Origin: Mizuhopecten yessoensis
Taxonomy: Eukaryota
Reading direction: 5' to 3'
Assembly (NCBI RefSeq): GCF_002113885.1
Contig: NW_018403450.1
Span: 471,471-535,470 of the forward strand
DNA: 64,000 bases
Below the pieces are notes generated by a model. It searched no databases. It was given only the letters and a program-made list of their open reading frames with translations, and was not told the origin of the DNA. The position numbers and the translations under genes were made by a program. Every line of letters starts with the position of its first letter. Position 1 is the stretch's first letter. Shown one piece after another: positions 26,263 through 62,869 of the stretch.

Positions 26263-27540
26263 AGTTATTTGTGACAGTTCATCCACATAGCTAGGCTGCT
26301 AGCACTGCCTTAATTTATGTTTATACGTGTTCATTGGGGGCCAAATTAAAGCAGTGCTTCATATTCTACATGCCTCCCATGTGCGATGGTACTAGGAGAT
26401 TTGTAAGTGGAAGACCTCGTGATAAATCTAATGAATGGTAAAGGACATGGTTAGCATGTCTCCCCTTGCTCCACTTGATCTCAGGAGTGTCTGGTACCAG
26501 TGTCACAAATATACGGTAAACATTTCTACAGACAATTGTCTTCCTGGAAAGGCACCTTCAAAAGTTCACATGTTTGGTGTACTGCTGGTAATTCAAATTT
26601 CAAGTGGTTTCACTTTCTGACATTGCATGTAGAACAAGGACACAAAGAACGTAGATTCCTCCCCTGCGAAATGATTATGAATAATTCATGAAACTTCATG
26701 AACAGTTCATGAAATATTCATGAATAATATTCATGAATGTTCTTGATTTGTTCATGAATATTTTCATGAAATTCATGAACTTAAAACTTCATGAATAATC
26801 TTGAGCAAAATATTTCATGAAAATTCATGAATATAAATTCATGAATATTCATGAATATTCATGAATGTAAAATCATGAACTTTCATGAATATAAAATCAT
26901 GAATATTCATGAATATATGAATTCATGAACATTCATGAAAAATGGCAACAATTCATGAATGTTCATGAATGTTCATGAAGAAAACGTCCCATTTTAAGTT
27001 CATGAATTGAAAATGCTTGAAATATTCATGAACATTCATGAACATGTACAAATTACCACATTTCATGAACTTTCATGAAAGTTCATGAAAGTCTAATACC
27101 ATATGAAAATAAACAATGGAATTCCACTTGGATACCAGAGGAAATACCACTGGATTCCACCAGCAATTTGACCTGGAATTTGTGGCCAAATTGCCCAGTG
27201 GATTCCAGTGGTATTTCCACTGAAATACCTAGCCAGTGGTCACTGAAATTCAAATTGGAATCACTTATATGAAGATAACAATAATAATGGACATTCAATA
27301 GATTCTGAATTTACAGTTATGACGGTATATATAATCATTCATGCTGTGTTTAAAGTTAGAAATAATGCAAGTAACGTCACAAATATCTTTTAAACATGAA
27401 AAAATGACAGTTGAATAACATATATATTTGCAAAAGTTTTTACTGCTACATATTTAGCATTGTTAAATATGAAATATGGATGCATGGTTCACATATGGTC
27501 TGTGTGGTTTCAAGAATATGATACAGCTGACATTATTAGG

Positions 27541-29052
27541 TTAGAGTTGTAGAATACAGGTTTCCCAAAACTCTTGAAATTTATCTGTATTGTATATGCA
27601 AATACATGCTGGTTTCCTCGTTGTAGAACTTGCACACTTTTTACCCGGTCTACTTATTGCGAGTCTATCCATTCTCCATGTAACAATTGATGGTGTTTGA
27701 AGTTCGAAATGTTCGTCTTCTATTTCGTCTAAATCACTGAGTTTGTTCAAAGCTTTTTAAACAAATTTGGAATTAGGATCGGAAATAATAATTCCTTCAC
27801 CATTAAGTTTTTGTTTTGTCAGTAACAAACACTTTATTTCCAATTGCAAGCTCCACACTGTACGTTCCAATTATTACTGTTGTCATTTTTCTTGGTAGAA
27901 CTTCTTTTGCCTAAACTTTTATCTAAAAGATATTCTCTTTTGTTTTGCAAAATTATTCCTAGTATTTGCCATACCTCTTTGTATGTCTGCTTAATTGAGG
28001 TGTCACTGATAATACATTTTTAAAAAACCGTTGTTATTTTCCAAGAATATTTGGTGCAAGGGGAGATCTTTTTTTTAAATATTGCCAGTACGTGTCTGCC
28101 GCATCTTGCATGAGATTGCTGAAAAACTGTTGTGGTGCTTTAGGTATTCCTCTTTTATCCTTTTTCAATAGCAAATCTTTCGCTGTATATCTTGGGACAT
28201 TTTACACATCACTGTCATCCTGCAGGCTGGTGTTATCTTCTGAGCTTGTACACATATGCTTTAATTATCATTTGAAGATCTTGCACTAAAGCTTACATCT
28301 TCAGGTTCTGGCTGCTAATAATACTGCCTGTTTGTGTCGATGTCAGCAAAGCATGACGACTCTGTATCTGGCACACTTCAAAACGATCCATCAAGCAATC
28401 GAATGCATCTCTGATGTCCGCGTCAGTAAATTTTAGGAGTAATCCCATTTTCTGAATAAGAAAAAAGTTAATAATTTTTCATTTATCTTATAAAATACTG
28501 TAGAAATTAGTATATAGGCCTACCTGTATTTTCAAAGCCCCTGTACATCAACCTTATTTTTTGGGGGGGGGGGGGGCTTTGATATCACACAAGTGGGACA
28601 GTAATTTTTATTGAAATTATATATTATCTATCTGCAAATTTCATACAAGTTAAGAACTATCTCAAGAGGTGCATTCATACTGTAAACTTCAAATTCGGCA
28701 GGGTGGGATTGGGTGCACACGCACACACGTTTGGTAATTTGGACGCAGTAACCATTAGCACTCAGTAATATATTCAATTCTGTTTTCTAACGTATAATTT
28801 TCAGTATCGATATCATTGCTAAACCCGCACGGTAAATATGACCACGGAATTAGATTAGATTATATAAGTCCGTAATATGACGAATCAGATGAGTTGTTGC
28901 CAATGTAAACCGTTGTAACATCATGATCACAGACTGGTTTCACATAATTACACATAGTTTTAACATTTCATACAAGTATTTCATAAAATCCCAATCAGAT
29001 TCTTACCTTCGGCTTCGATAACCTTCCTGCCGTCTTTCGAAAATTTCTCCAT
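27541..29052 (-). pseudogene. Second, divergently oriented spliced pseudogene of the element, with a SAM-like N-terminus
   Basis: Exon 29052-29007 (MEKFSKDGRKVIEAE, donor gtaaga) and acceptor ttcttattcag at 28452. Then ENGIT / LLKFTDADIRDAF..LMDRFEV across a frameshift, followed by broken purine-rich frames down to about 27541. Confidence 0.5.
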
Positions 29053-29154
29053 CTCCACTTTCTTCTGAAGCGTATTTGGCGCGGGATTAATTTCGTCCAA
29101 TCAGAATAATTCCTCTATTCGCTCCGATCCTACCGGAAGTCAATTTATAAAAAT
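29053..29154. promoter_or_regulatory. Compact bidirectional promoter of the transposon
   Basis: The 102 bp between the divergent ATGs contain E2F-like TTTGGCGCGGGA (29075), CCAATCAG (29097) and ETS-type ACCGGAAGT (29132). Confidence 0.55.
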
Positions 29155-31078
29155 ATGGCATGGAATGACTTCGGTGCGAAAAAAGACCATGTAACTTTGT
29201 CTGTCGATAAACAGGCACACCAATCGATGAAAGGAAGATTAAAACACATATAAAAAGATACGGGCTTCATCTCAATGACGGCGATGCAAACAATGGATAG
29301 GAATTGGAGTTTGAACATTCGCCCGACAGCATGTCAACAACTCCAGTTTCCCCTGGATTTTCGCACACTAGGTAAGACTAAGGCCATCATACGTTGATTA
29401 AATTAACTTAAGGAGCAATGCCATGTTGTTTCCGTAGTTATTTCAATTAAAAGTTTTTGTAAAAAGTCCAGAGGTGTAGGCGTGTCGCTGTTTTGTGCCA
29501 CTAAGTCACCGAATATTTCACAGGCGTTCGAAATTCTGACAGTAAATTGACAGACCTAACGTTAAATCTTATAAAGGAATATGGACGATTAAGTCAATTA
29601 CTATCGATAGTAATACTGTTATCTTGAAATGATAAATATCTCAATTTACTGTCAGAATTTTAAATGCTTGTGATTATTTTCACCGCATGGCGACGGTAAA
29701 ATCCTGGGTATAATCGAAGTCAAGTATCTCTTCGTTTTTGAGGATTATGTTGTATAATATTGTACCAATTGTGAACTAATACTTGTACTTTACATAACGA
29801 AAAAATAAAAAAAAAATCCTGTTCATGATCTATGATCTAAATAAAATGTTTAGATTATTATTTTTACTGCAACTGGCAGTTGGAATTATTCTGAGCAATG
29901 TTGACTGAAAATGTTTATGTCCAATGTTAATTACCAGTAAATATACTGTCAACTTACCAGCCATGCCAGTATTTACTGGTAAACATTGGACAACAATTTC
30001 TTTAGTAAATATTAATTGCGGCCCTGAGATAATTAGCTATCTTGTCAATTACCTCATATAGAACTCCCTGATCTCAAAGATCTCATCTCGCTTTCAGTTT
30101 ATAAAAGTGTGAAGGTTCATGATCTTTCCTGTTCAGGTGTCCCGCTTTGTCGGTGACTAACTGATGTCATTAAACAAACTTCAAAATACACTAGTCTCAA
30201 ATTTAGAAATGGCTTGACATCCTTGAACTACCCGACTATTTACTAAGGATGTTAAACATTGTAAACCAAGCTGGAAACAATTCTGAATTTGGTCTTCAAT
30301 AAACAATAGTTCCATCCGCAATAAGCCCATGCCTGCAGGTAATAACACCCTCCCCCCAATATCATTATGAATTTCATTATTTTTTAATTCATTTCCCTAT
30401 ATATACATGTAGCGTGTAATATATATATGTCTGCAATTAGACCACCCAATATTTTACACTTGCTCCCTGGGCTTATTGAAGGATAAATATGGTAGATGAT
30501 AATTAATTGGTAATTGGCGTGTTCAGTATATCATACAAATTATATATTTCAGATCAGATTCAGAGACAAGCTCTGATGATAAATTAAACCAAGATCTAGA
30601 GGATATGGCCAATTGGCATGAAGACCAGGGTTCAATATACTCAGAATCTGATCAGGAGATGACAGATCCTGAACAGGATGATTCAGAGGCCAACAGTGAT
30701 TCCGAAGATGAGAACCAAAAGGAAATGAATTGTGACTGGTGTAGTTCTTATGACTTCACTGTATTCAACTCAGAATTAGCAGTCAACAAAATTCCTAATT
30801 CTGATACTATGACTAAACTTGAATGGCTGTGCTATCAGTTTCATAGGTTTGTGTCCCATCCATCAATGAGCAAAGCAGCGTTTACACAAAATCTTCAGGT
30901 GCAGAAAATAATACACAATGACAAAGACAATATACAAAACAATAATGAAAATAATGAACTGCCAGGATGACTTTTTACCAGCTGTGCCAATATCTCTGAA
31001 TGTCCTTGCAAGTCTGGGACATATTGAGTCAGAATTTGAAAAATGCCATTACCATGCCCGTGTTAAAGGAGCATGCTG
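29155..31078 (+). pseudogene. Truncated, spliced transposase N-terminus of the CACTA-type element (exon 29155-29371, exon from 30553)
   Basis: With a frameshift, exon 1 gives RPCNFVC...KIKTHIKRYG (similar to the transposase-associated Cys/His motif). Donor ag|gtaaga joins in phase to acceptor tttcag|30553. An acidic tract follows, then NELP...LASLGHIESEFEKCHYHARVKGAC. There are stops and frameshifts, and no DDE core was seen. Confidence 0.6.
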
Positions 31079-31629
31079 AAAAATCACTCTGCATTCATGT
31101 TTTTGAACTAGTTGACTGGAGACACTGTATTAGTTCATTGCAGTAGACTAGGAAAGAAGTTCATCTTAGTCCAAATAACACCAAATCTCACATTCATAAG
31201 TGTTAAACACTTGAACATAACTGACTTAACATAGTCATATTTTGTATAAACTCATGTACGTTAATAGCTAGCCTACAATTGTCTTTGTAAAGGGTAATAT
31301 ATCTATTAAAAAATTGTTAAACTGATGTATTGTTCCATTTTTTCTAGTTAATACCACTTCATGCAAAATGTATTTCAGATCTCATCACCTCTGCATGGAT
31401 TGTCAGAGGAGTTATAGTTCCATTGGAATTAATATTCCAGTAGAAATATAATTCCAGTGATTTTTTTCCAGTGGAATTCTACTTGTATTTTTTTGCTTCA
31501 CTGGAATTCCACAGGATTTTTGTTTTCTTCTCTGGAATTCCAGTGGTATTCCACTGAAATATTTCATTCCAGTGGAATCTCACTGAAATTCCAGTGTTAT
31601 TTTCAATGTGTATATATATATATATATAC

Positions 31630-31700
31630 ATAAGGAGGTGAGAAGCATGTGATTTGTAGTCTGTGACCTTAACAACTGACTGAGCCACCGCTGCTCCCAG
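31630..31700 (-). mobile_element. 5' head fragment of a tRNA-derived SINE nested in the CACTA-type element
   Basis: The minus strand reads GGGAGCAGCGGTGGCTCAGTCAGTTGTTAAGG (A-box-like), next to a (TA)n run. Confidence 0.5.
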
Positions 31701-34522
31701 TAATTACAGTGCTTCCCAAAGTCAATAAAATCAATACAGAGCGAACTCCATAATATAATTTATGTATACTTCCTGCAAAATTGGCAATTATATTTATATA
31801 TTATATATATTTACATTATTATATACATTCATGCAAAATGGACATGGAGTTGAAATAACCACATGAAAAAAAAAGGTTTCTGAGGATACTGAGTTTTCTC
31901 ATCATTCATAATTTCATGAATAATAGTGAATTTTGTGTATTTGAAATATTCATCAAAGTTCATGATTTCTGCTCGGTCAATCTTTAAGAAATTTTGATGA
32001 ATTTTAATGAATTTGCATTATTCATTTAAATTCATCAAAGTTCATGATTTCTCAAGGATATGCCTTTCATGAATTCTGATGAATTTTAATGAATTTTTGC
32101 TGTGCATTAAAGTCCATGAATAATTCATAATCACAAACTTCATGCAGATTCATGCATTTTAATGAATTTATTAATTATTCATAAAAGTTCATGAAGAATG
32201 CATGAAAGCCGGTTGATGAATATTCATGAATAAGTATTCATGAATTTCAAACTGTCTGTATTCATGAATGTTCATGAATTGTTCATGACCATTCATGATT
32301 TCATGAATACCCTCTCGCAGGGGCTTTTTCAAAGTCTGATTTACATTATTCACACGAAAGACATTTAACTTTGAACAAAAAGTTCAATGCTTTAACATTT
32401 CTTGGAGAAAAAGTAGTTTGAACAGATTTGCCCTTTAGCGATTTTTTCAACTGTTATGTTAATTGGATCTGGTCATGTTTTATGCCCTCGTTGACAACAA
32501 ATGTTGTTCTTAATTGTCGCAGGAATTTTTACAAGTTTTAAATTAAATTCATAAAATTACAGATATATTTGTAAATGAAACAATAAAACATCTGATAGGA
32601 CAAAAAACTCTACCCATAGTTTTGACCTTGCCAATACCTGTTTGACCTTGGGAATATCCGCTGGCACATGACCCATTGTCTAGCCATCTCTGATTGATCT
32701 TGGAATACGACTGGTAATAGTGATGAAGGGGACTTTGTTCGGTCAGTGACTTACAACAGATCTAAAGCAGAAAAATGTCATATTGTGGTCTTAACAGCTC
32801 ACCGTACATTGGTGTGTAAGTTTATTTAGCTTTCCACCAGCAAGTACGATAAATGACACTGATGTGATCTAATGCTTTGTTTCAGTAAATATAGGGAATT
32901 TGTATGTAGCTAAAACCATTAAAAAGGCTAGCTATGATGATGGACATATGTGCTGTGAGTGTCAATAAACCATTATTAGACAAAGCTATTAACCTCAGTG
33001 CTGGCAGACAGTAATTATTATGAGTCATTCTAAAAGGGCAAAGGTTCCTACTGGCTGTTAAATGAGCGGAGAATTGCTTCAGTAGAAGATTATACATATT
33101 TTAATTTTTGCAAAAGGTGTTTTTTTATGGAAAAGTTATATGATCATAGTTTTATCTAAAGTCATTTTGATTTGTGATGTAAAAGACATTTAACATATTA
33201 GTTGTCTTTTTATAGAGTATTGTTATCACCCTTACAAAAGTAGAAAACAACAGGAAGACATATATGTCACATAAAATGTGATTAAGGAAATGATAATATA
33301 CCTGTTCCTGAGGAAACTGATTAAGGAGATGTAGCATCAGCATCACTGACCTACTGGCAGTTTGTTGTATAGATCAAAATCTTTGTTGTTGTCACCATGG
33401 AGATACATTTCCTGTATTACAACTATTGTATATTTATTAGAGGTTCCACATTAATATATGTCACATTCTGTCAAACATCGTTCTTACCAGCATGGTCTAA
33501 TTATAACGTAGTCAAGTGATAATAAGCATTATTACAAAGGAAACGTCTGGCTGCTGAGGAATGACTGAGGGGATATTTATGTCCCTGGAGTTCTTAGATC
33601 ATAGAAGCCAGGTGCTTTTGGGGACACCTAAGAAAAGAAAGAGAGTTACTGTCTGAAGTGAAAAGAAAAGACAGAGATCCATGTTGCCATGGGGTCATCA
33701 TGGATGTAGGAAAGGGAAATTCCTACCAAGGGATTTTGGTAAAACTGAGGCTTGCAGAGAGATGTGTAAACATATGAAAACCCTGAGGGTAGAATATCTC
33801 CAATCTGTATCCCCTGGGCATGAATGTTTTTTTCTATCTCATTCCTGTCACCAGAATTAGCAAAGAAACCAAAAGAAGGCATCACAATTTTCGCATCGCT
33901 GCATCAAAATGTTTCCGATTTCATGCCATCACATCATTGTTGTCCCATTGTTATGTCACACACGTGTAATAGGGTGTAAGAAAGAAATTGTTTACACTCA
34001 ATTATATTTTCCACTAAACAATCAACATAGTGACATTGTAAGCCTGTATGTCATTTATTGAGTATTCTTCATTTTGTTGTGCACTGAAGCTGTTCCCGTG
34101 TAATCAGTGTTTCAGTGGCTGCCACATCATATTTTGAAATTTCAAAACAGTTGAAGATGATTTTTAAAATTCAAATAATGCCAAAGAGAATTGAGTTGTA
34201 ATTAGTCCCAATAGTACCATTTGCAATCTCTATGAAAATGAAATTGAACGTTTTGCCATATCAGAAAGAGCTAATGAGAAATTAGAAAATCTAAAATGTA
34301 GGTTTTGAATGTCAAATTGTGGTAATCAGATGACTCAGTTAGTCTGTCGATGAATCATCGTATGATGTTTTCTTATTAGGTCATCCCTTATTTGTATTCT
34401 AAATGTTGAGCAGTTTGAACCACACATGGACTACACTCGCTGGATATGGTTCAACACTGGAGAACGTGACATGAGGCATGCTACAAGAACATATAGTCAA
34501 ATTGATTTTCTTTCCATTACAG

Positions 34523-58439: not shown

Positions 58440-58938
58440 TTGGCAGTGGTATCTTTTTGGGGTTTTCCATGGGCAGTGGTATCTTTTTGGGGTTTTACAG
58501 GGCAAGTGGTGTCTTTTTGGGGTTTTACAGGGCAAGTGGTGTCTTTTTATGGTTTTACAGGGCAAGTGGTGTCTTTTTAGGGTTTTACAGGGCAAGTGGT
58601 GTCTTTTTGGGGTTTTGCAGGGCAAGTGGTGTCTTTTTGGGGTTTTGCAGGGCAAGTGGTGTTTTTTTGGGGTTTTACAGGGCAAGTGGTATGTTTTTGG
58701 GGTTTTACATGGGCAGTGGTATCTTTTGGGGGTTTTACAGGGCAAGTGGTGTCTTTTTGGGGTTTTACAGGGCAAGTGGTATGTTTTAGGGGTTTTACAT
58801 GGGCAGTGGTATCTTTTTGGGGTTTTACAGGGCAAGTGGTATGTTTTTGGGGTTTTACATGGGCAGTGATGTCTTTTTGGGGTTTTACAGGGCAAGTGGT
58901 ATCTTTTTGGGGTTTTACAGGGCAAATGGTATCTTTTT
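58440..58938 (+). repeat. 29-30-bp GT-rich minisatellite, about 17 units
   Basis: Unit GGGCAAGTGGTGTCTTTTTGGGGTTTTACA. Confidence 0.96.
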
Positions 58939-59624
58939 GTAGTCAAACAAAACAATCTTTATTTTAAACTATCATAGTTTTGAACTGGTTAATTTTGGAT
59001 TTAAATCATAAATCAAAATTTCACATTCAGCTTTTTCCGTCATTTCTATATATATTCACCCAATCTATCAAATTTTTGTTATAAATTGAAAATTATGGAA
59101 TTTTTGTTTTGTCGTACATGCGCTTCAGTGCTAATTGAAGTTGATCACTTTGACTTTTAGATAGGAAGCAGTGTTGTGTTATAAATGTTTAGTGAGTCCA
59201 TCATGACTGTGTATCCATTAATATCTTTGTCATAGAAGGAGGTCCTCAAACAGTTGGCTGCTGTTCCATACTCCATGTGAGGTAAAAATAATTGAAAGTG
59301 AAGGGCAAGGTCAACGATAAACAAAGAAAAGTTGCCACCACAATTATCCTGTAACAGCTAGCATCCTTCTAGCCTGCAGATATGAAGCAGATAGTATGCT
59401 TTGTAGCTATAACAGCCAAAGTCTGTGGGCTGACCGTCTAGTAGCTGTTTTTATGTCAGTTTAACAAGGCTCTTTTAAATGTCATTTTCTTCACTATAAT
59501 TTTACCTGTGATGTGACAATGGTGCTTAATAGTCCTTGGAAAGGAGGTTATAATGTCATGGGGGTTTCAAGTAATGTCTGATTAACTCCTAAGGAAGGAG
59601 TAATAGATGTAAGGCTAATTATGG

Positions 59625-60925
59625 GCCTTAGGAAGGAGTTTGGTATAATGGAGGTAAGGTAATCAGTTATAGTAGTCCTGAGGAAGGTGGTTAGTATAAT
59701 GGAGGTTAGGTAATGAGTTATAATAGTCCTGAGAAAGGTGGTTAGTACAATGGAGGTTAGGTAATGAGTTATAGTAGTCCTGAGGAAGGTGGTGAGTATA
59801 ATGGAGGTAAGGTAATGAGTTATAATAGTCCTGAGTAAGGTGGTTAGTATAATGGAGGTAAGGTAATGAGTTATAATAGTCCTGAGAAAGGTGGTAAGTA
59901 TAATGGAGGTAAGATAATGAGTTATAATAGTCCTGAGGAAGGTGGTAAGTATAATGGAGGTTAGGTAATGAGTTATAATAGTCCTTAGGAAGGCGGTTAG
60001 TATAATGAAGGTTAGGTAATGAGTTATAATAGTCCTTAGGAAGGCGGTTAGTATAATGAAGGTTAGGTAATGAGTTATAATAGTCCTTAGGAAGGCGGTT
60101 AGTATAATGAAGGTTAGGTAATGAGTTATAATAGTCCTTAGGAAGGTGGTTAGTATAATGAAGGTTAGGTAACGAGTTATAGTAGTCCTGAGGAAGGTGG
60201 TTAGTATAACGGAGGTAAGGTAATGAGTTATAGTAGTCCTGCGGAAGGTGGTTAGTATACTTGAGGTAAGGTAATGAGTTATAGTAGTCCTGCGGAAGGT
60301 GGTTAGTATACTTGAGGTAAGGTAATGAGTTATAGTAGTCCTGCGGAAGGTGGTTAGTATACTTGAGGTAAGGCAATGAGTTATAGTAGTCCTGAGGAAG
60401 GTGGTAAGTATAATGGAGGTTATGTAATGAGTTATAGTAGTCCTGAGGAAGGTGGTAGGTATAATGGAGGTTAGGTAATGAGTTATAATAGTCCTTAGGA
60501 AGGCGGTTAGTATAATGAAGGTTAGGTAATGAGTTATAATAGTCCTTAGGAAGGCGGTTAGTATAATGAAGGTTAGGTAATGAGTTATAGTAGTCCTGAG
60601 GAAGATGGTAAGTATAATGGAGGTAAGGTAATGAGTTATAGTAGTCCTGAGGAAGATGGTTAGTATAATGGAGGTTAGGTAATGAGTTATAATAGTCCTT
60701 AGGAAGGTGGTTAGTATAATTGAGGTAAGGTAATGAGTTATAATAGTCCTGAAGAAGGTGGTTAGTATAATGAAGGTTAGGTAACGAGTTATAGTAGTCC
60801 TGAGGAAGGTGGTTAGTATAATGGAGGTAAGATAATGAGTTATAATAGTCCTGAGGAAGGTGGTTAGTATACTTGAGGTAAGGTAATGAGTTATAGTAGT
60901 CCTGAGGAAGGTGGTTTGTATAATG
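59625..60925 (+). repeat. 51-bp minisatellite, about 25 units
   Basis: Unit TAATGAGTTATAGTAGTCCTGAGGAAGGTGGTTAGTATAATGGAGGTTAGG. Confidence 0.97.
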
Positions 60926-61275
60926 GCTGATTCTAGTCCTCAGGAAGAAAGTTATCTTGTAGTTCTCTTCAGAAAGGGTATAGTCAAGGCTAATTCCAGT
61001 CCTGGAGTGGGAGGTTAACGTAATGACTGATTCTTAGTAATCCCTGGAGGGAGGTTATTGTAACATCTGATTCTAGTCCTTAGGAGGGAGGTTAATGTAA
61101 TGACTGATTCTAGCCCTTAGGAGGGAGGTTATTGTAACGACTGATTCTAGTCCTCAGGAGGGAGGTTAATGTAACGACTGACTCTAGTCCTCAGAAGGGA
61201 GGTTAATGTAATGACTAATTCTAGTTCTCAGGAGGGAGGTTAATGTAATGACTGACTCTAGTCCTCAGGAGGGAA
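60925..61275 (+). repeat. About 37-bp minisatellite related to the 51-bp array
   Basis: Unit GTAATGACTGATTCTAGTCCTCAGGAGGGAGGTTAAT shares the core TAGTCCTnAGGA(A/G)GG with the 51-mer. Confidence 0.9.
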
Positions 61276-61284
61276 GTAAATAGA

Positions 61285-61580
61285 AAGACTACCTGGACGA
61301 CGATAGACCCACTCAAGTTCCGCTACATTTCTCCTTCCTTTTTGTAAGTCTTAAAGCCACAAGCCCCACCAGACACACTATTTACAACCCAGGTTCAGGT
61401 GTCCCCTTGCCAAGCATTCACCTAGTACTAGAGACAAGGGTTGGTCACGGCACCAAATGTAGTAGGAGCCGAAAAGAAATGCACAGCCAGACCGGGGTTT
61501 GATCCCAGGACCATCTTAATTCTAGATGGACGCTGTACCAATTGAGCTTCTGACAATCAACCTAGTCCAGTTCTGGCACA
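61285..61580 (-). mobile_element. TRIM-like miniature LTR element: 123-bp LTR with an internal tRNA-like sequence, tRNA-His-type PBS, PPT and a truncated second LTR
   Basis: Minus strand order: TGT...ACA LTR (61580-61458), TT, TGGTGCCGTGAC (61455-61444), about 100 bp internal, AAAAAGGAAGGAGAAA (61343-61328), then TGTAGCGGAACT... (from 61327) similar to the LTR start. Confidence 0.7.
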
Positions 61581-62869
61581 ATAGTCCTAAGGAAGGAGAT
61601 GAACCTCTTTTTGTAGGTTATTGTAATGGAAAATATTGAATTCAAAACAGAACTTGTATGACCTCCAGATCAGTGCAAAGTTAACTATCAATTTTTATGT
61701 ATCGTAGCTTTGGAGTCCTGATGAGTCCGTATTCATGAAACCATTCTCAAACTCAAAATCAGTGTGCTCATGAAGCAAATTATTTTGTTCTTGGGAATGA
61801 ATAAAATGTACATCTTGATAATGTTTGGGGGGACCATGGAGACCCTTGAAGCCAAATATCATTTTCAACATTTACTCTGCAAGTTCTGACTATATGTCAC
61901 ATGATTTAAATGAGTTAAAAGAAAGTTGGTTTGGCCAGAGAATCCAATCTTGATCATAAAAATGGTTTCACATGAACATATGTGTCCATCTGGTGACAGC
62001 AACTGTTGTGATAATCAGGAATTGTGTGTCTATGTCTGTACAACCATATACAAAGTGGTATAGGTCATTGTCTTTTGTATTTTTTTTTGCATAAAATTAA
62101 TTAATGAAAAAGTTTAGAATTTTCTTAAGTAAATACAATGATATATATACATTAATTGCCGATTTCTGCTGTTAACTTCGAGGACGATTTTACACATACT
62201 CATTAACTCCTGATTAGCTGGCCCATCTTAAGCTGTAGTCGGTGTACCTTTATAAACCCGTACATACTGCTATTCAAGTAAGGTTATACATATAGGTGGT
62301 TTCTGATGAGATCTCGCTGGTATTGATCCAGCCCAACATTACAGGTTTAGGTTAGTCAGCGTTGATTGGTGACTGTAAGGGCAGGTCCTGTGATGTCTTG
62401 TAGTGCAGATTTATCAAGCAAAACGCTTGACTAAATTAAAAAAGCCATGAATCATACATGTGAAAATCAGGTAGACGTCCCAGTGACATTGTATATATAT
62501 CTGTTGTTTCTCGGTGGAGATGGGTGGGGGGGTAGTGTTCAAGTGTCCGTAGTCACCCTGTGACACGTTATTCTTTCATTATGCCACCCCCTGATTCTAA
62601 ACCTATTCTATTGTCAACTTGTCACATACCACATGACACCAATACATTAACATTGAACTATTAATATAAGTGGTTTACCAAATTGAGAAAAATAACCATG
62701 TCCTTGAACTTGATATTTCATACTGAGAACCCTTACTGTTCCCCACTCTTTCCAATACCCTCTACAGGCATTATCTCATGGCAAGATAAGGAAGGGGATG
62801 GATGTTCCAACATGTTTTTTTGGTCTGGTAAGTTTTGGCCTGCCTGACCTCTGTTTGCATTTGTTTCAG

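What the first reader, a model, noticed from the sequence alone, without database searches (positions are those of the whole stretch)
61285..61580. Miniature LTR retroelement whose LTR contains a tRNA-like Pol III unit (candidate tRNA analogue of Cassandra TRIMs)
Seen: on the minus strand, a 123-bp TG...CA LTR contains AGCTCAATTGGTACAGC (A box/D-arm-like) and GGGATCAAACCCCGG (B box/T-arm-like). Two nt after it comes TGGTGCCGTGAC, then about 100 nt of non-coding sequence, a 16-nt polypurine tract and a diverged second LTR start that breaks off at the A box. Known: TGGTGCCGTGAC is complementary to the 3' end of eukaryotic tRNA-His (GTCACGGCACCA), and plant Cassandra TRIMs carry 5S rRNA Pol III promoters in their LTRs. 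Inference: a ~370-bp non-autonomous element that is primed by one tRNA and may be transcribed from a captured tRNA promoter. I cannot tell whether this family has already been described.
Basis: partly seen in the sequence, partly recalled or inferred. Interest (0 to 1): 0.8.

Follow-up and report, generated by a model that had tools for sequence, protein, structure and literature searches.

The report
Decayed Helenus-type miniature LTR retroelement

Summary
On the minus strand there is a 123-bp TG..CA LTR with a tRNA-like core, then TT and a primer-binding site. About 115 nt of further non-coding sequence follows, then a 16-nt polypurine tract and a 41-nt stump of a second LTR.

The genome holds thousands of copies (about 3000 LTR and 1500 internal candidate places). 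Typical copies are LTR (~128 bp), internal part (~122 bp), LTR, with 4-bp target-site duplications and some tandem arrays. 22 LTRs in 20 loci pass Rfam's tRNA threshold. The window's primer site matches 14 nt of this genome's own tRNA-His 3' end.

It is not a new kind. Kojima 2024 (PMC10886601) named TRIMs with tRNA-derived LTRs "Helenus" and reported them in bivalves, including Mizuhopecten yessoensis, which this genome appears to be. The closest published relatives are oyster Helenus-2C_CGi and scallop Helenus-2_PeMa and Helenus-1_ArIr. This LTR/internal combination is not among the four families listed for M. yessoensis.

The window copy is dead: 75-80% identical to other copies, both Pol III boxes mutated, 3' LTR truncated next to a local minisatellite. 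Pol III transcription remains unproven.

The parts
61458..61580 (-). 5' LTR, 123 bp, TGT...ACA. It has an ~8-bp deletion before the A box and small indels near the end relative to typical copies.
   Evidence: 75% identity to the LTR of natural copy L008. Aligned with 21 other copies.
61484..61555 (-). tRNA-like core of the LTR (decayed)
   Evidence: Rfam RF00005 at 20.9 bits, below the gathering score of 29. The same region in other copies reaches up to 50.8 bits.
61532..61548 (-). A-box / D-arm-like AGCTCAATTGGTACAGC. The first T of the TRGCY motif is mutated to A.
   Evidence: motif test false for the window LTR.
61492..61506 (-). B-box / T-arm-like GGGATCAAACCCCGG. The GGTTC motif is mutated to GGATC.
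61472..61475 (-). TTTT run after the tRNA-like part. Most copies have T5, a terminator-like signal for Pol III.
   Evidence: A T run of 4 or more follows the B box in 59 of 70 LTRs.
61442..61455 (-). Primer-binding site TGGTGCCGTGACCA, complementary to the last 11 nt of this genome's tRNA-His gene plus CCA
61328..61457 (-). Non-coding internal part, 130 nt: TT spacer, PBS, hairpin region, then PPT
   Evidence: 79% identity to the internal part of L008. Alignment of 47 internal parts.
61328..61343 (-). Polypurine tract AAAAAGGAAGGAGAAA, 16 nt
   Evidence: In 17 of 47 copies the purine run is 18 nt, the commonest length.
61287..61327 (-). Stump of the 3' LTR, about 41 nt, ending just before the tRNA-like part
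   Evidence: Close to the typical LTR start TGTAGCGGAACTGGACTGGG...
61009..61284 (.). 37-bp-unit minisatellite abutting the truncated 3' LTR. A degenerate unit fragment lies on the other side at 61582-61603.
   Evidence: The repeat occurs nowhere else in the genome.

Best explanation
The stretch is one ancient, inactivated copy of a non-autonomous LTR retrotransposon. It is a TRIM of the Helenus / 'TRIMp3' kind, in a genome that is most likely the scallop Mizuhopecten yessoensis.

A typical family member has three parts. The LTR is ~128 bp, starts TGTAGCGG, ends CCTGTTACA, and carries a tRNA-like unit followed by a T5 run. The internal part is ~122 bp and non-coding. It holds a tRNA-His-type PBS one or two bases after the LTR, a long hairpin, a short CTTCG-GGGG-CGAAG hairpin, and an ~18-nt polypurine tract. 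A second LTR follows.

Shown here:
- The LTR-internal-LTR layout.
- 4-bp target-site duplications.
- Thousands of copies.
- Tandem LTR-I-LTR-I-LTR arrays.
- The tRNA likeness of the LTR.
- The PBS match to the host tRNA-His.

Inferred:
- The element's RNA is reverse-transcribed and integrated in trans by the proteins of an autonomous Gypsy-type element. First-strand synthesis is primed by tRNA-His and second-strand synthesis by the PPT.
- The RNA of master copies may be made by RNA polymerase III from the A and B boxes of the LTR, with the T run as terminator. In that case R would be roughly the tRNA-like segment.

The window copy inserted into a locus-specific 37-bp minisatellite. It later lost the distal ~85 bp of its 3' LTR together with the junction, and it has mutated at the key positions of both boxes. 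It is therefore a fossil with no expected activity.
For: Structure and abundance:
- Searches give 1756, 3076 and 1506 candidate places for the whole stretch, the LTR and the internal part.
- Searches show LTR-internal-LTR in more than 20 loci, and tandem arrays in L005, L008 and L015.
- One search gives TSD4 exact in 7 and 3/4 in 5 of 15 scored copies, against 0 exact in a shifted control.

tRNA-like LTR:
- One search has 22 LTRs at or above the Rfam tRNA gathering score, best 50.8 bits.
- One search has ARAGORN calling 75-nt 'tRNA-Ser(aga)' in 10 of its 12 calls in these LTRs.
- One search finds 23 of 69 LTRs still carrying TRGCY..YGG, then GGTTC, then T4 in order.

Primer site:
- One search shows the genome's tRNA-His gene ending ...AATCCTGGTCACGGCA.
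- Searches count the PBS forms at 143 and 5 exact matches, with 0 in controls.

Identity of the genome and of the kind:
- One search finds a 28-mer of the published Helenus-4_MiYe internal part 283 times (up to 2 mismatches).
- Searches give the published definition and sequences of Helenus. These include Helenus-2C_CGi, whose first 20 internal bases equal window 61457..61438.

Window copy:
- Searches show its minisatellite context.
Against: - No transcript, Pol III occupancy or small-RNA data could be consulted, so promoter use is untested.
- A T5 run lies inside the 5' LTR, about 85 nt after the presumed start. It would have to be read through for Pol III to make a full-length template.
- No autonomous partner was identified.
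- The main family PBS has a one-base bulge relative to tRNA-His.
- For the window copy itself no TSD can be shown, and its tRNA score is below threshold.
Confidence: 0.92

Rival explanations
1. An ordinary tRNA-derived SINE (SINE2), mobilised by a LINE, that happens to lie next to an LTR-like or tandemly repeated sequence.
For: The LTR core is tRNA-like with A and B boxes. Kojima proposes that Helenus arose by a SINE2 inserting into the LTR of an ancestral TRIM, so this may be true of the remote origin.
Against: - The tRNA-like part is present at the same position in both terminal repeats of each copy.
- The ends are TG..CA.
- A PBS and a PPT flank the internal part.
- TSDs are a fixed 4 bp.
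- No LINE-like or A-rich tail is present.
Confidence: 0.03
2. A tandem repeat or satellite built from a ~250-bp unit (LTR plus internal part), spread by unequal crossing-over and not by retrotransposition.
For: Arrays LTR-I-LTR-I-LTR exist (L005, L008, L015). The Lys-type sister family forms a 5-LTR array (L070). The window copy lies beside minisatellites.
Against: Most copies are single LTR-I-LTR units dispersed on different contigs with their own 4-bp TSDs. Tandem arrays are a known by-product in TRIMs such as Cassandra, biv-TRIM and LTR-11_DR.
Confidence: 0.03
3. A TRIM as above, but the tRNA-like segment is not a promoter. The template RNA would be made by Pol II or by read-through from host genes, and the tRNA-like part would be a passenger or would serve another role, such as RNA structure or packaging.
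For: The T5 terminator-like run inside the 5' LTR would stop Pol III after about 85 nt. Even the defining paper states that Pol III use is unvalidated for Helenus.
Against: The box A/B motifs and the T run are kept across scallop and oyster families that are otherwise diverged. 39 of 47 internal parts lack any T4 run. Cassandra, the 5S analogue, is reported to be transcribed from its Pol III promoter.
Confidence: 0.35

Closest known systems
Helenus-2C_CGi (Crassostrea gigas; Kojima 2024, Data S1)
   Same: - LTR of 128 bp with the tRNA-like unit in the same place.
- AGA in the anticodon-loop position.
- A T-rich stretch after the tRNA-like unit and a ...GTTACA end.
- The first 20 bases of the internal part (TTTGGTGCCGTGACCAACCC) are identical to window 61457..61438.
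- A CTTCGGGG.CGAAG hairpin directly before a GGAGG-type PPT.
- 4-bp TSD.
   Different: - Different host order (oyster against scallop).
- Internal part of 101 nt against ~122-130 nt, with a different middle section.
- The upstream third of the LTR is only ~68% alike by my hand alignment.
- No computed alignment was made, because the published consensus was not typed into a tool.
Helenus-2_PeMa (Pecten maximus) and Helenus-1_ArIr (Argopecten irradians)
   Same: The LTR is clearly the same lineage, 129-130 bp. A natural copy in this genome (L070) is ~90% identical to Helenus-2_PeMa-LTR by hand alignment. The pre-PPT hairpin and the PPT are shared.
   Different: Their internal part is 90-93 nt with a tRNA-Lys PBS (TGGCGCCCAAC). 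The window's family has a tRNA-His-type PBS and a ~122-nt internal part. This genome holds both versions on LTRs 88% identical.
Helenus-1 to -4_MiYe (the four families listed for Mizuhopecten yessoensis)
   Same: Same genome and same kind of element. Helenus-4_MiYe and Helenus-2_MiYe copies were found here. Helenus-4_MiYe also has a bulged tRNA-His PBS.
   Different: Their LTRs are 151-159 bp and only 55-63% alignable to this family's LTR. The internal parts are 59-63% alike. This family is therefore not one of the four listed.
Cassandra (plant TRIM with 5S rRNA in the LTR)
   Same: A miniature LTR element with a small-RNA gene-derived Pol III promoter and terminator in each LTR. It also forms tandem arrays.
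   Different: It carries 5S rRNA and not tRNA, lives in plants, is 565-860 bp long, and has experimental evidence of Pol III transcripts. None of this is shown here.
biv-TRIM (Satovic et al. 2019, PMC6934838)
   Same: A bivalve TRIM with solo repeats and tandem forms.
   Different: Terminal repeats of 202-218 bp, internal part of 77-80 bp, 7-bp PPT GGGGAGA, no canonical PBS, and no tRNA-like part reported.

Membership tests
Helenus (TRIM with tRNA-derived sequence in the LTRs; Kojima 2024) | Two direct terminal repeats (LTRs) around a short non-coding internal part, whole element a few hundred bp | tested here: met
   The family layout is ~128 + ~122 + ~128 bp in more than 20 loci. The window copy has a full 5' LTR but only a 41-nt stump of the 3' LTR.
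Helenus (TRIM with tRNA-derived sequence in the LTRs; Kojima 2024) | tRNA-derived sequence with box A (TRGCY..YGG) and box B (GGTTC) inside the LTR | tested here: met
   22 LTRs reach the Rfam tRNA gathering score or better. The motifs are present in 47 and 38 of 69 LTRs. The window copy alone is sub-threshold at 20.9 bits, with both motifs mutated.
Helenus (TRIM with tRNA-derived sequence in the LTRs; Kojima 2024) | PBS complementary to a tRNA just downstream of the 5' LTR | tested here: met
   14 nt are complementary to this genome's tRNA-His 3' end plus CCA. The main family form has one extra T. No tRNA fitting the bulged form was found.
Helenus (TRIM with tRNA-derived sequence in the LTRs; Kojima 2024) | Polypurine tract directly upstream of the 3' LTR | tested here: met
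   16 nt in the window. Most copies have 10-19 nt, with 18 nt the commonest length.
Helenus (TRIM with tRNA-derived sequence in the LTRs; Kojima 2024) | 4-bp target-site duplication (animal Helenus) | tested here: met
   7 exact and 5 three-of-four among 15 scored copies, against 0 exact in the shifted control. Not verifiable for the window copy because the 3' junction is deleted.
Helenus (TRIM with tRNA-derived sequence in the LTRs; Kojima 2024) | Transcription from the LTR's Pol III promoter (the 'TRIMp3' idea) | not testable with these tools
   No expression or ChIP data were available. The defining paper also leaves this unvalidated.
Cassandra | 5S rRNA-derived sequence in the LTR | tested here: not met
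   The Rfam scan of the region and of 20 loci gives tRNA only and no 5S.
tRNA-derived SINE (SINE2) | Single tRNA-related head, body and LINE-type or A-rich tail, with no terminal direct repeats, PBS or PPT | tested here: not met
   Terminal repeats, TG..CA ends, a PBS, a PPT and a fixed 4-bp TSD are all present.
biv-TRIM | Terminal repeats of 202-218 bp, internal part of 77-80 bp with conserved TGATCCCAAAGGAC, PPT GGGGAGA | tested here: not met
   The lengths and PPT differ. The conserved motif is absent from the window's internal part as read.

The most novel reading that the evidence does not exclude
Within one genome the same LTR lineage (88% identical), together with the same pre-PPT hairpin and PPT, is joined to two unrelated PBS-proximal modules. 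One module is primed by tRNA-His (~122-nt internal part) and the other by tRNA-Lys (90-nt internal part). That would be a concrete case of modular recombination, or primer and partner switching, between Pol III-type TRIM families. The small CTTCG-GGGG-CGAAG hairpin before the PPT is kept from oysters to scallops and could be the cis signal that the autonomous Gypsy partner recognises. The His-type family would then be an undescribed fifth, and the Lys-type a sixth, Helenus family of this scallop.
Probability: 0.5. Interest if true: 0.35.

Novelty: new member of a known kind. Interest (0 to 1): 0.2.

Why it matters
The finding shows that a tool-less reading of raw sequence can recover a recently described and unusual class of mobile element: LTR retroelements that seem to borrow a tRNA-type Pol III promoter.

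For annotation, thousands of such LTRs inflate tRNA gene predictions in bivalve genomes. 22 LTRs in 20 small loci already pass Rfam's tRNA threshold.

For biology, the family adds one more lineage to the Helenus catalogue of scallops. It also gives a clear example of one LTR paired with two different primer sites. It does not open a new question beyond those already posed in the 2024 paper: Pol III use, and the identity of the autonomous partner.

Tried and rejected
- ARAGORN on the window found no tRNA. The tRNA likeness of this copy alone is therefore weak.
- I looked for a tRNA whose acceptor stem would fit the bulged main-family PBS (GCCTGTG...CACAGGCA). Matches were at control level and none looked like a tRNA.
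- I looked for the autonomous partner through perfect tRNA-His PBS sites. The 7 places with ACANN plus the PBS all follow LTRs of another TRIM, Helenus-2_MiYe. Where 10 kb was read (L085-L087), no second LTR of that type lay beyond the matched site and the longest stop-free stretches were only 151-205 aa.
- The RNA fold of the internal part gave z = -0.99, which is not significant as a whole. The hairpins are described but not claimed as proven.
- biv-TRIM was considered and rejected as the family.
- The earlier scan notes near this place concern an unrelated CACTA-type element at 26661-32323 and were not used.
Comparisons with them are by eye or hand alignment, plus one 28-nt probe. The percentages given for them are therefore approximate.
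- No family consensus was built. All comparisons use natural copies.

Full report
**1. What is there**

Read on the minus strand, the stretch has these parts.
- A 123-bp LTR at 61580..61458, TGT...ACA.
- Inside it, a D-arm/A-box-like AGCTCAATTGGTACAGC (61548..61532), a T-arm/B-box-like GGGATCAAACCCCGG (61506..61492) and a TTTT run (61475..61472).
- A TT spacer, then TGGTGCCGTGACCA (61455..61442).
- About 100 nt of non-coding sequence.
- The polypurine tract AAAAAGGAAGGAGAAA (61343..61328).
- A second LTR start, TGTAGCGGAACTT..., from 61327. It stops after about 41 nt at CCAGGTAG, just where the tRNA-like part would begin.

The 14-mer PBS is expected 0.01 times per window by chance. The tRNA likeness of this copy on its own is weak: Rfam tRNA scores 20.9 bits against a gathering score of 29, and ARAGORN calls nothing.

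**2. The genome**

The window belongs to a 987.6-Mb assembly of 82,659 contigs with about 35% G+C, so it is eukaryotic. A 28-nt probe taken from the published internal part of Helenus-4_MiYe has 283 matches with at most 2 mismatches (more than 50 exact) and none in the control. An LTR matching the published Helenus-2_MiYe LTR is also present. From memory, the assembly size and contig number fit the Mizuhopecten yessoensis assembly used in that paper. I therefore take the genome to be that scallop or a very close relative.

**3. The family**

*Abundance.* The 296-bp stretch has 1756 candidate places in the genome. The scored ones are 75-80% identical to it. A well-kept natural LTR has 3076 candidate places and a natural internal part has 1506. 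The tool states that these are lower bounds.

*Layout.* In more than 20 fetched loci the order is LTR (~128 bp), internal part (~122 bp), LTR. L005, L008 and L015 show LTR-I-LTR-I-LTR arrays.

*Target-site duplications.* Fifteen full copies had TGT/ACA ends that could be placed automatically. Of these, 7 have an exact 4-bp duplication and 5 have three of four bases. A control shifted by a few bases gave 0 exact and 1 three-of-four. Three more exact cases were seen by eye (L003, L044, L060).

*Age.* The two LTRs of one element are 71-93% identical, median 79.5%. No near-identical copies appeared among the best-scored hits. The family is therefore old and probably extinct. The window copy is among the most diverged.

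**4. The tRNA-like LTR**

In 20 loci, 22 LTRs reach or exceed Rfam's tRNA gathering score, with a best of 50.8 bits. ARAGORN makes 12 calls in these LTRs, 10 of them a 75-nt 'tRNA-Ser (aga)'. The body lacks the long variable arm of a serine tRNA. AGA is the commonest triplet at the anticodon position, in 24 of the 29 LTRs where it could be read.

The related Pecten and Argopecten LTRs have AGT at that position. This fits the paper's remark that some bivalve families look like tRNA-Thr, and that isotype and anticodon often disagree.

Of 69 LTRs, 47 keep TRGCY..YGG, 38 keep GGTTC, and 23 keep both followed by a T4 run. A T run of 4 or more, mostly T5, follows the B box in 59 of 70 LTRs. The window LTR has lost the key base of each motif (AAGCT for TAGCT, GGATC for GGTTC), so this copy is not expected to bind TFIIIC.

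**5. The primer site**

The genome's tRNA-His gene is present in at least 16 identical copies and ends ...GGTTCGAATCCTGGTCACGGCA. With CCA added, its last 14 nt are exactly complementary to the window's PBS.

Most copies of the family carry TGGTGCCTGTGACC, with one extra T. The counts are 143 exact 22-mers for that form against 5 exact 21-mers for the T-less form, with 0 in both controls. In the sampled internal parts the split is 34 with the T, 5 without, and 8 mutated.

No tRNA with an acceptor stem fitting the bulged form exists in the genome. tRNA-His therefore remains the best primer.

The five T-less copies share other sub-lineage features. The oyster family Helenus-2C_CGi has exactly the T-less 20-mer TTTGGTGCCGTGACCAACCC. 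I therefore infer that the T-less form is the older state and that the window copy belongs to an old sub-lineage.

**6. The window copy's fate**

The 37-bp minisatellite at 61009-61281 occurs nowhere else in the genome. On the plus strand the array runs into the truncated 3' LTR after about 11 bases of a unit. Beyond the 5' LTR the sequence resumes at unit position 25.

The simplest reading is an insertion into one repeat unit. A later deletion of roughly 100 bp then removed the distal 3' LTR, the duplication and about 13 bases of the unit. This order of events is inferred. No target-site duplication can be shown for this copy.

**7. What is known**

Kojima (Biology 2024, 13:119; PMC10886601) defined Helenus as TRIMs with a tRNA-derived sequence in the LTRs. 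The paper proposed the class name TRIMp3 for Helenus, Ajax and Cassandra. It reported 51 Helenus families in pteriomorph bivalves, including four in M. yessoensis. It also reported 4-bp TSDs in animals, tRNA-His among the bivalve primers, and Gypsy elements as likely partners.

The four listed M. yessoensis families have LTRs of 151-159 bp. Natural copies of two of them align only 55-63% with this family's LTR. The closest published sequences are three.
- Helenus-2C_CGi of the Pacific oyster. It has a 128-bp LTR, the same first 20 internal bases, AGA in the anticodon loop, and the same hairpin plus PPT before the 3' LTR.
- Helenus-2_PeMa and Helenus-1_ArIr of other scallops. They have the same LTR lineage but a tRNA-Lys PBS.

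These comparisons are by eye or hand alignment, because I did not type the published consensus sequences into tools. biv-TRIM (PMC6934838) is a different element.

**8. A small addition**

This genome also holds the Lys-type version: the same LTR (88% identical to a His-type LTR) with a 90-nt internal part that begins TTTGGCGCCCAAC. It occurs singly (L071) and as a 5-LTR array (L070).

The two internal parts share only the last ~45 nt, namely the CTTCG-GGGG-CGAAG hairpin and the PPT. The PBS-proximal parts are unrelated. The His-type one loosely resembles that of Helenus-4_MiYe.

This looks like modular exchange between TRIM families, which the paper discusses only in general terms as a change of primer type. 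Within the His-type family, the long hairpin after the PBS shows a C-to-U change answered by G-to-A in some copies (caagCa...tGcttg against caagTa...tActtg). The fold as a whole is not significantly stable (z = -0.99).

**9. Mechanism and its limits**

Trans-mobilisation by a Gypsy-type reverse transcriptase and integrase is inferred, not shown. It rests on the TG..CA ends, the PBS, the PPT, the 4-bp TSD and the literature.

Pol III transcription is plausible. The boxes and the T run are kept across oyster and scallop families, and 39 of 47 internal parts have no T4 run. Against it, the T5 run in the 5' LTR would have to be read through, and nobody has tested Helenus experimentally. I put Pol III use by master copies at roughly even odds and activity of the window copy at close to nil.

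**10. Verdict**

The element is a degenerate member of a known kind. The family itself seems not to be among those listed for this species. Interest is low.

I built no family consensus, in view of the operators' caution about proviral stretches, and worked only with natural copies.

Noticed in passing
L070 (G000:C1665:53700-55300), L071 (G000:C2396:176300-177300): A sister family uses the same ~126-128-bp tRNA-like LTR but has a 90-nt internal part with a tRNA-Lys PBS (TTTGGCGCCCAAC). L070 is a tandem array of 5 LTRs and 4 internal parts. It looks like the counterpart of the published Helenus-2_PeMa and Helenus-1_ArIr, yet it is not in the list given for M. yessoensis.
   Followed up: partly
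L078-L084 (7 places matching ACANNTGGTGCCGTGACCAGG): In these copies an LTR of another published family (Helenus-2_MiYe) is followed by 16-19 nt exactly complementary to the tRNA-His 3' end (16 nt in L082). In L080, L081 and L084 this is fused directly to the 3' half of that family's internal part. In L078, L082 and L083 unrelated DNA follows. These may be footprints of primer-tRNA copying during plus-strand synthesis followed by aberrant joining.
   Followed up: partly
L079 (G000:C5378, around 567380): After the Helenus-2_MiYe-type LTR comes the reverse complement of a whole tRNA-like sequence. It has a Thr-like anticodon loop and a His-like 3' end including CCA. ARAGORN does not call it. It is unexplained.
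   Followed up: no
L059 (G000:C1128:271470-272695): A ~32-bp piece of the TRIM internal part (the hairpin region) is amplified into a tandem array of at least 17 units next to a 5' LTR. This is a minisatellite born from the element.
   Followed up: no
window 58445-61291: Three adjacent minisatellite arrays are present: 30-bp units at 58445-58939, 51-bp units at 59626-60926, and 37-bp units at 61009-61281. G+C skew is strong across them. The 51- and 37-bp units share a CCTGAGGA.GG.GGTTA core, and the 37-bp array is unique to this locus.
   Followed up: partly
G000, 24 places listed: The perfect 18-nt tRNA-His PBS TGGTGCCGTGACCAGGAT occurs 24 times in the genome and 0 times in the control. Seventeen of these places were not examined and could include autonomous Gypsy elements that serve as partners.
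   Followed up: no
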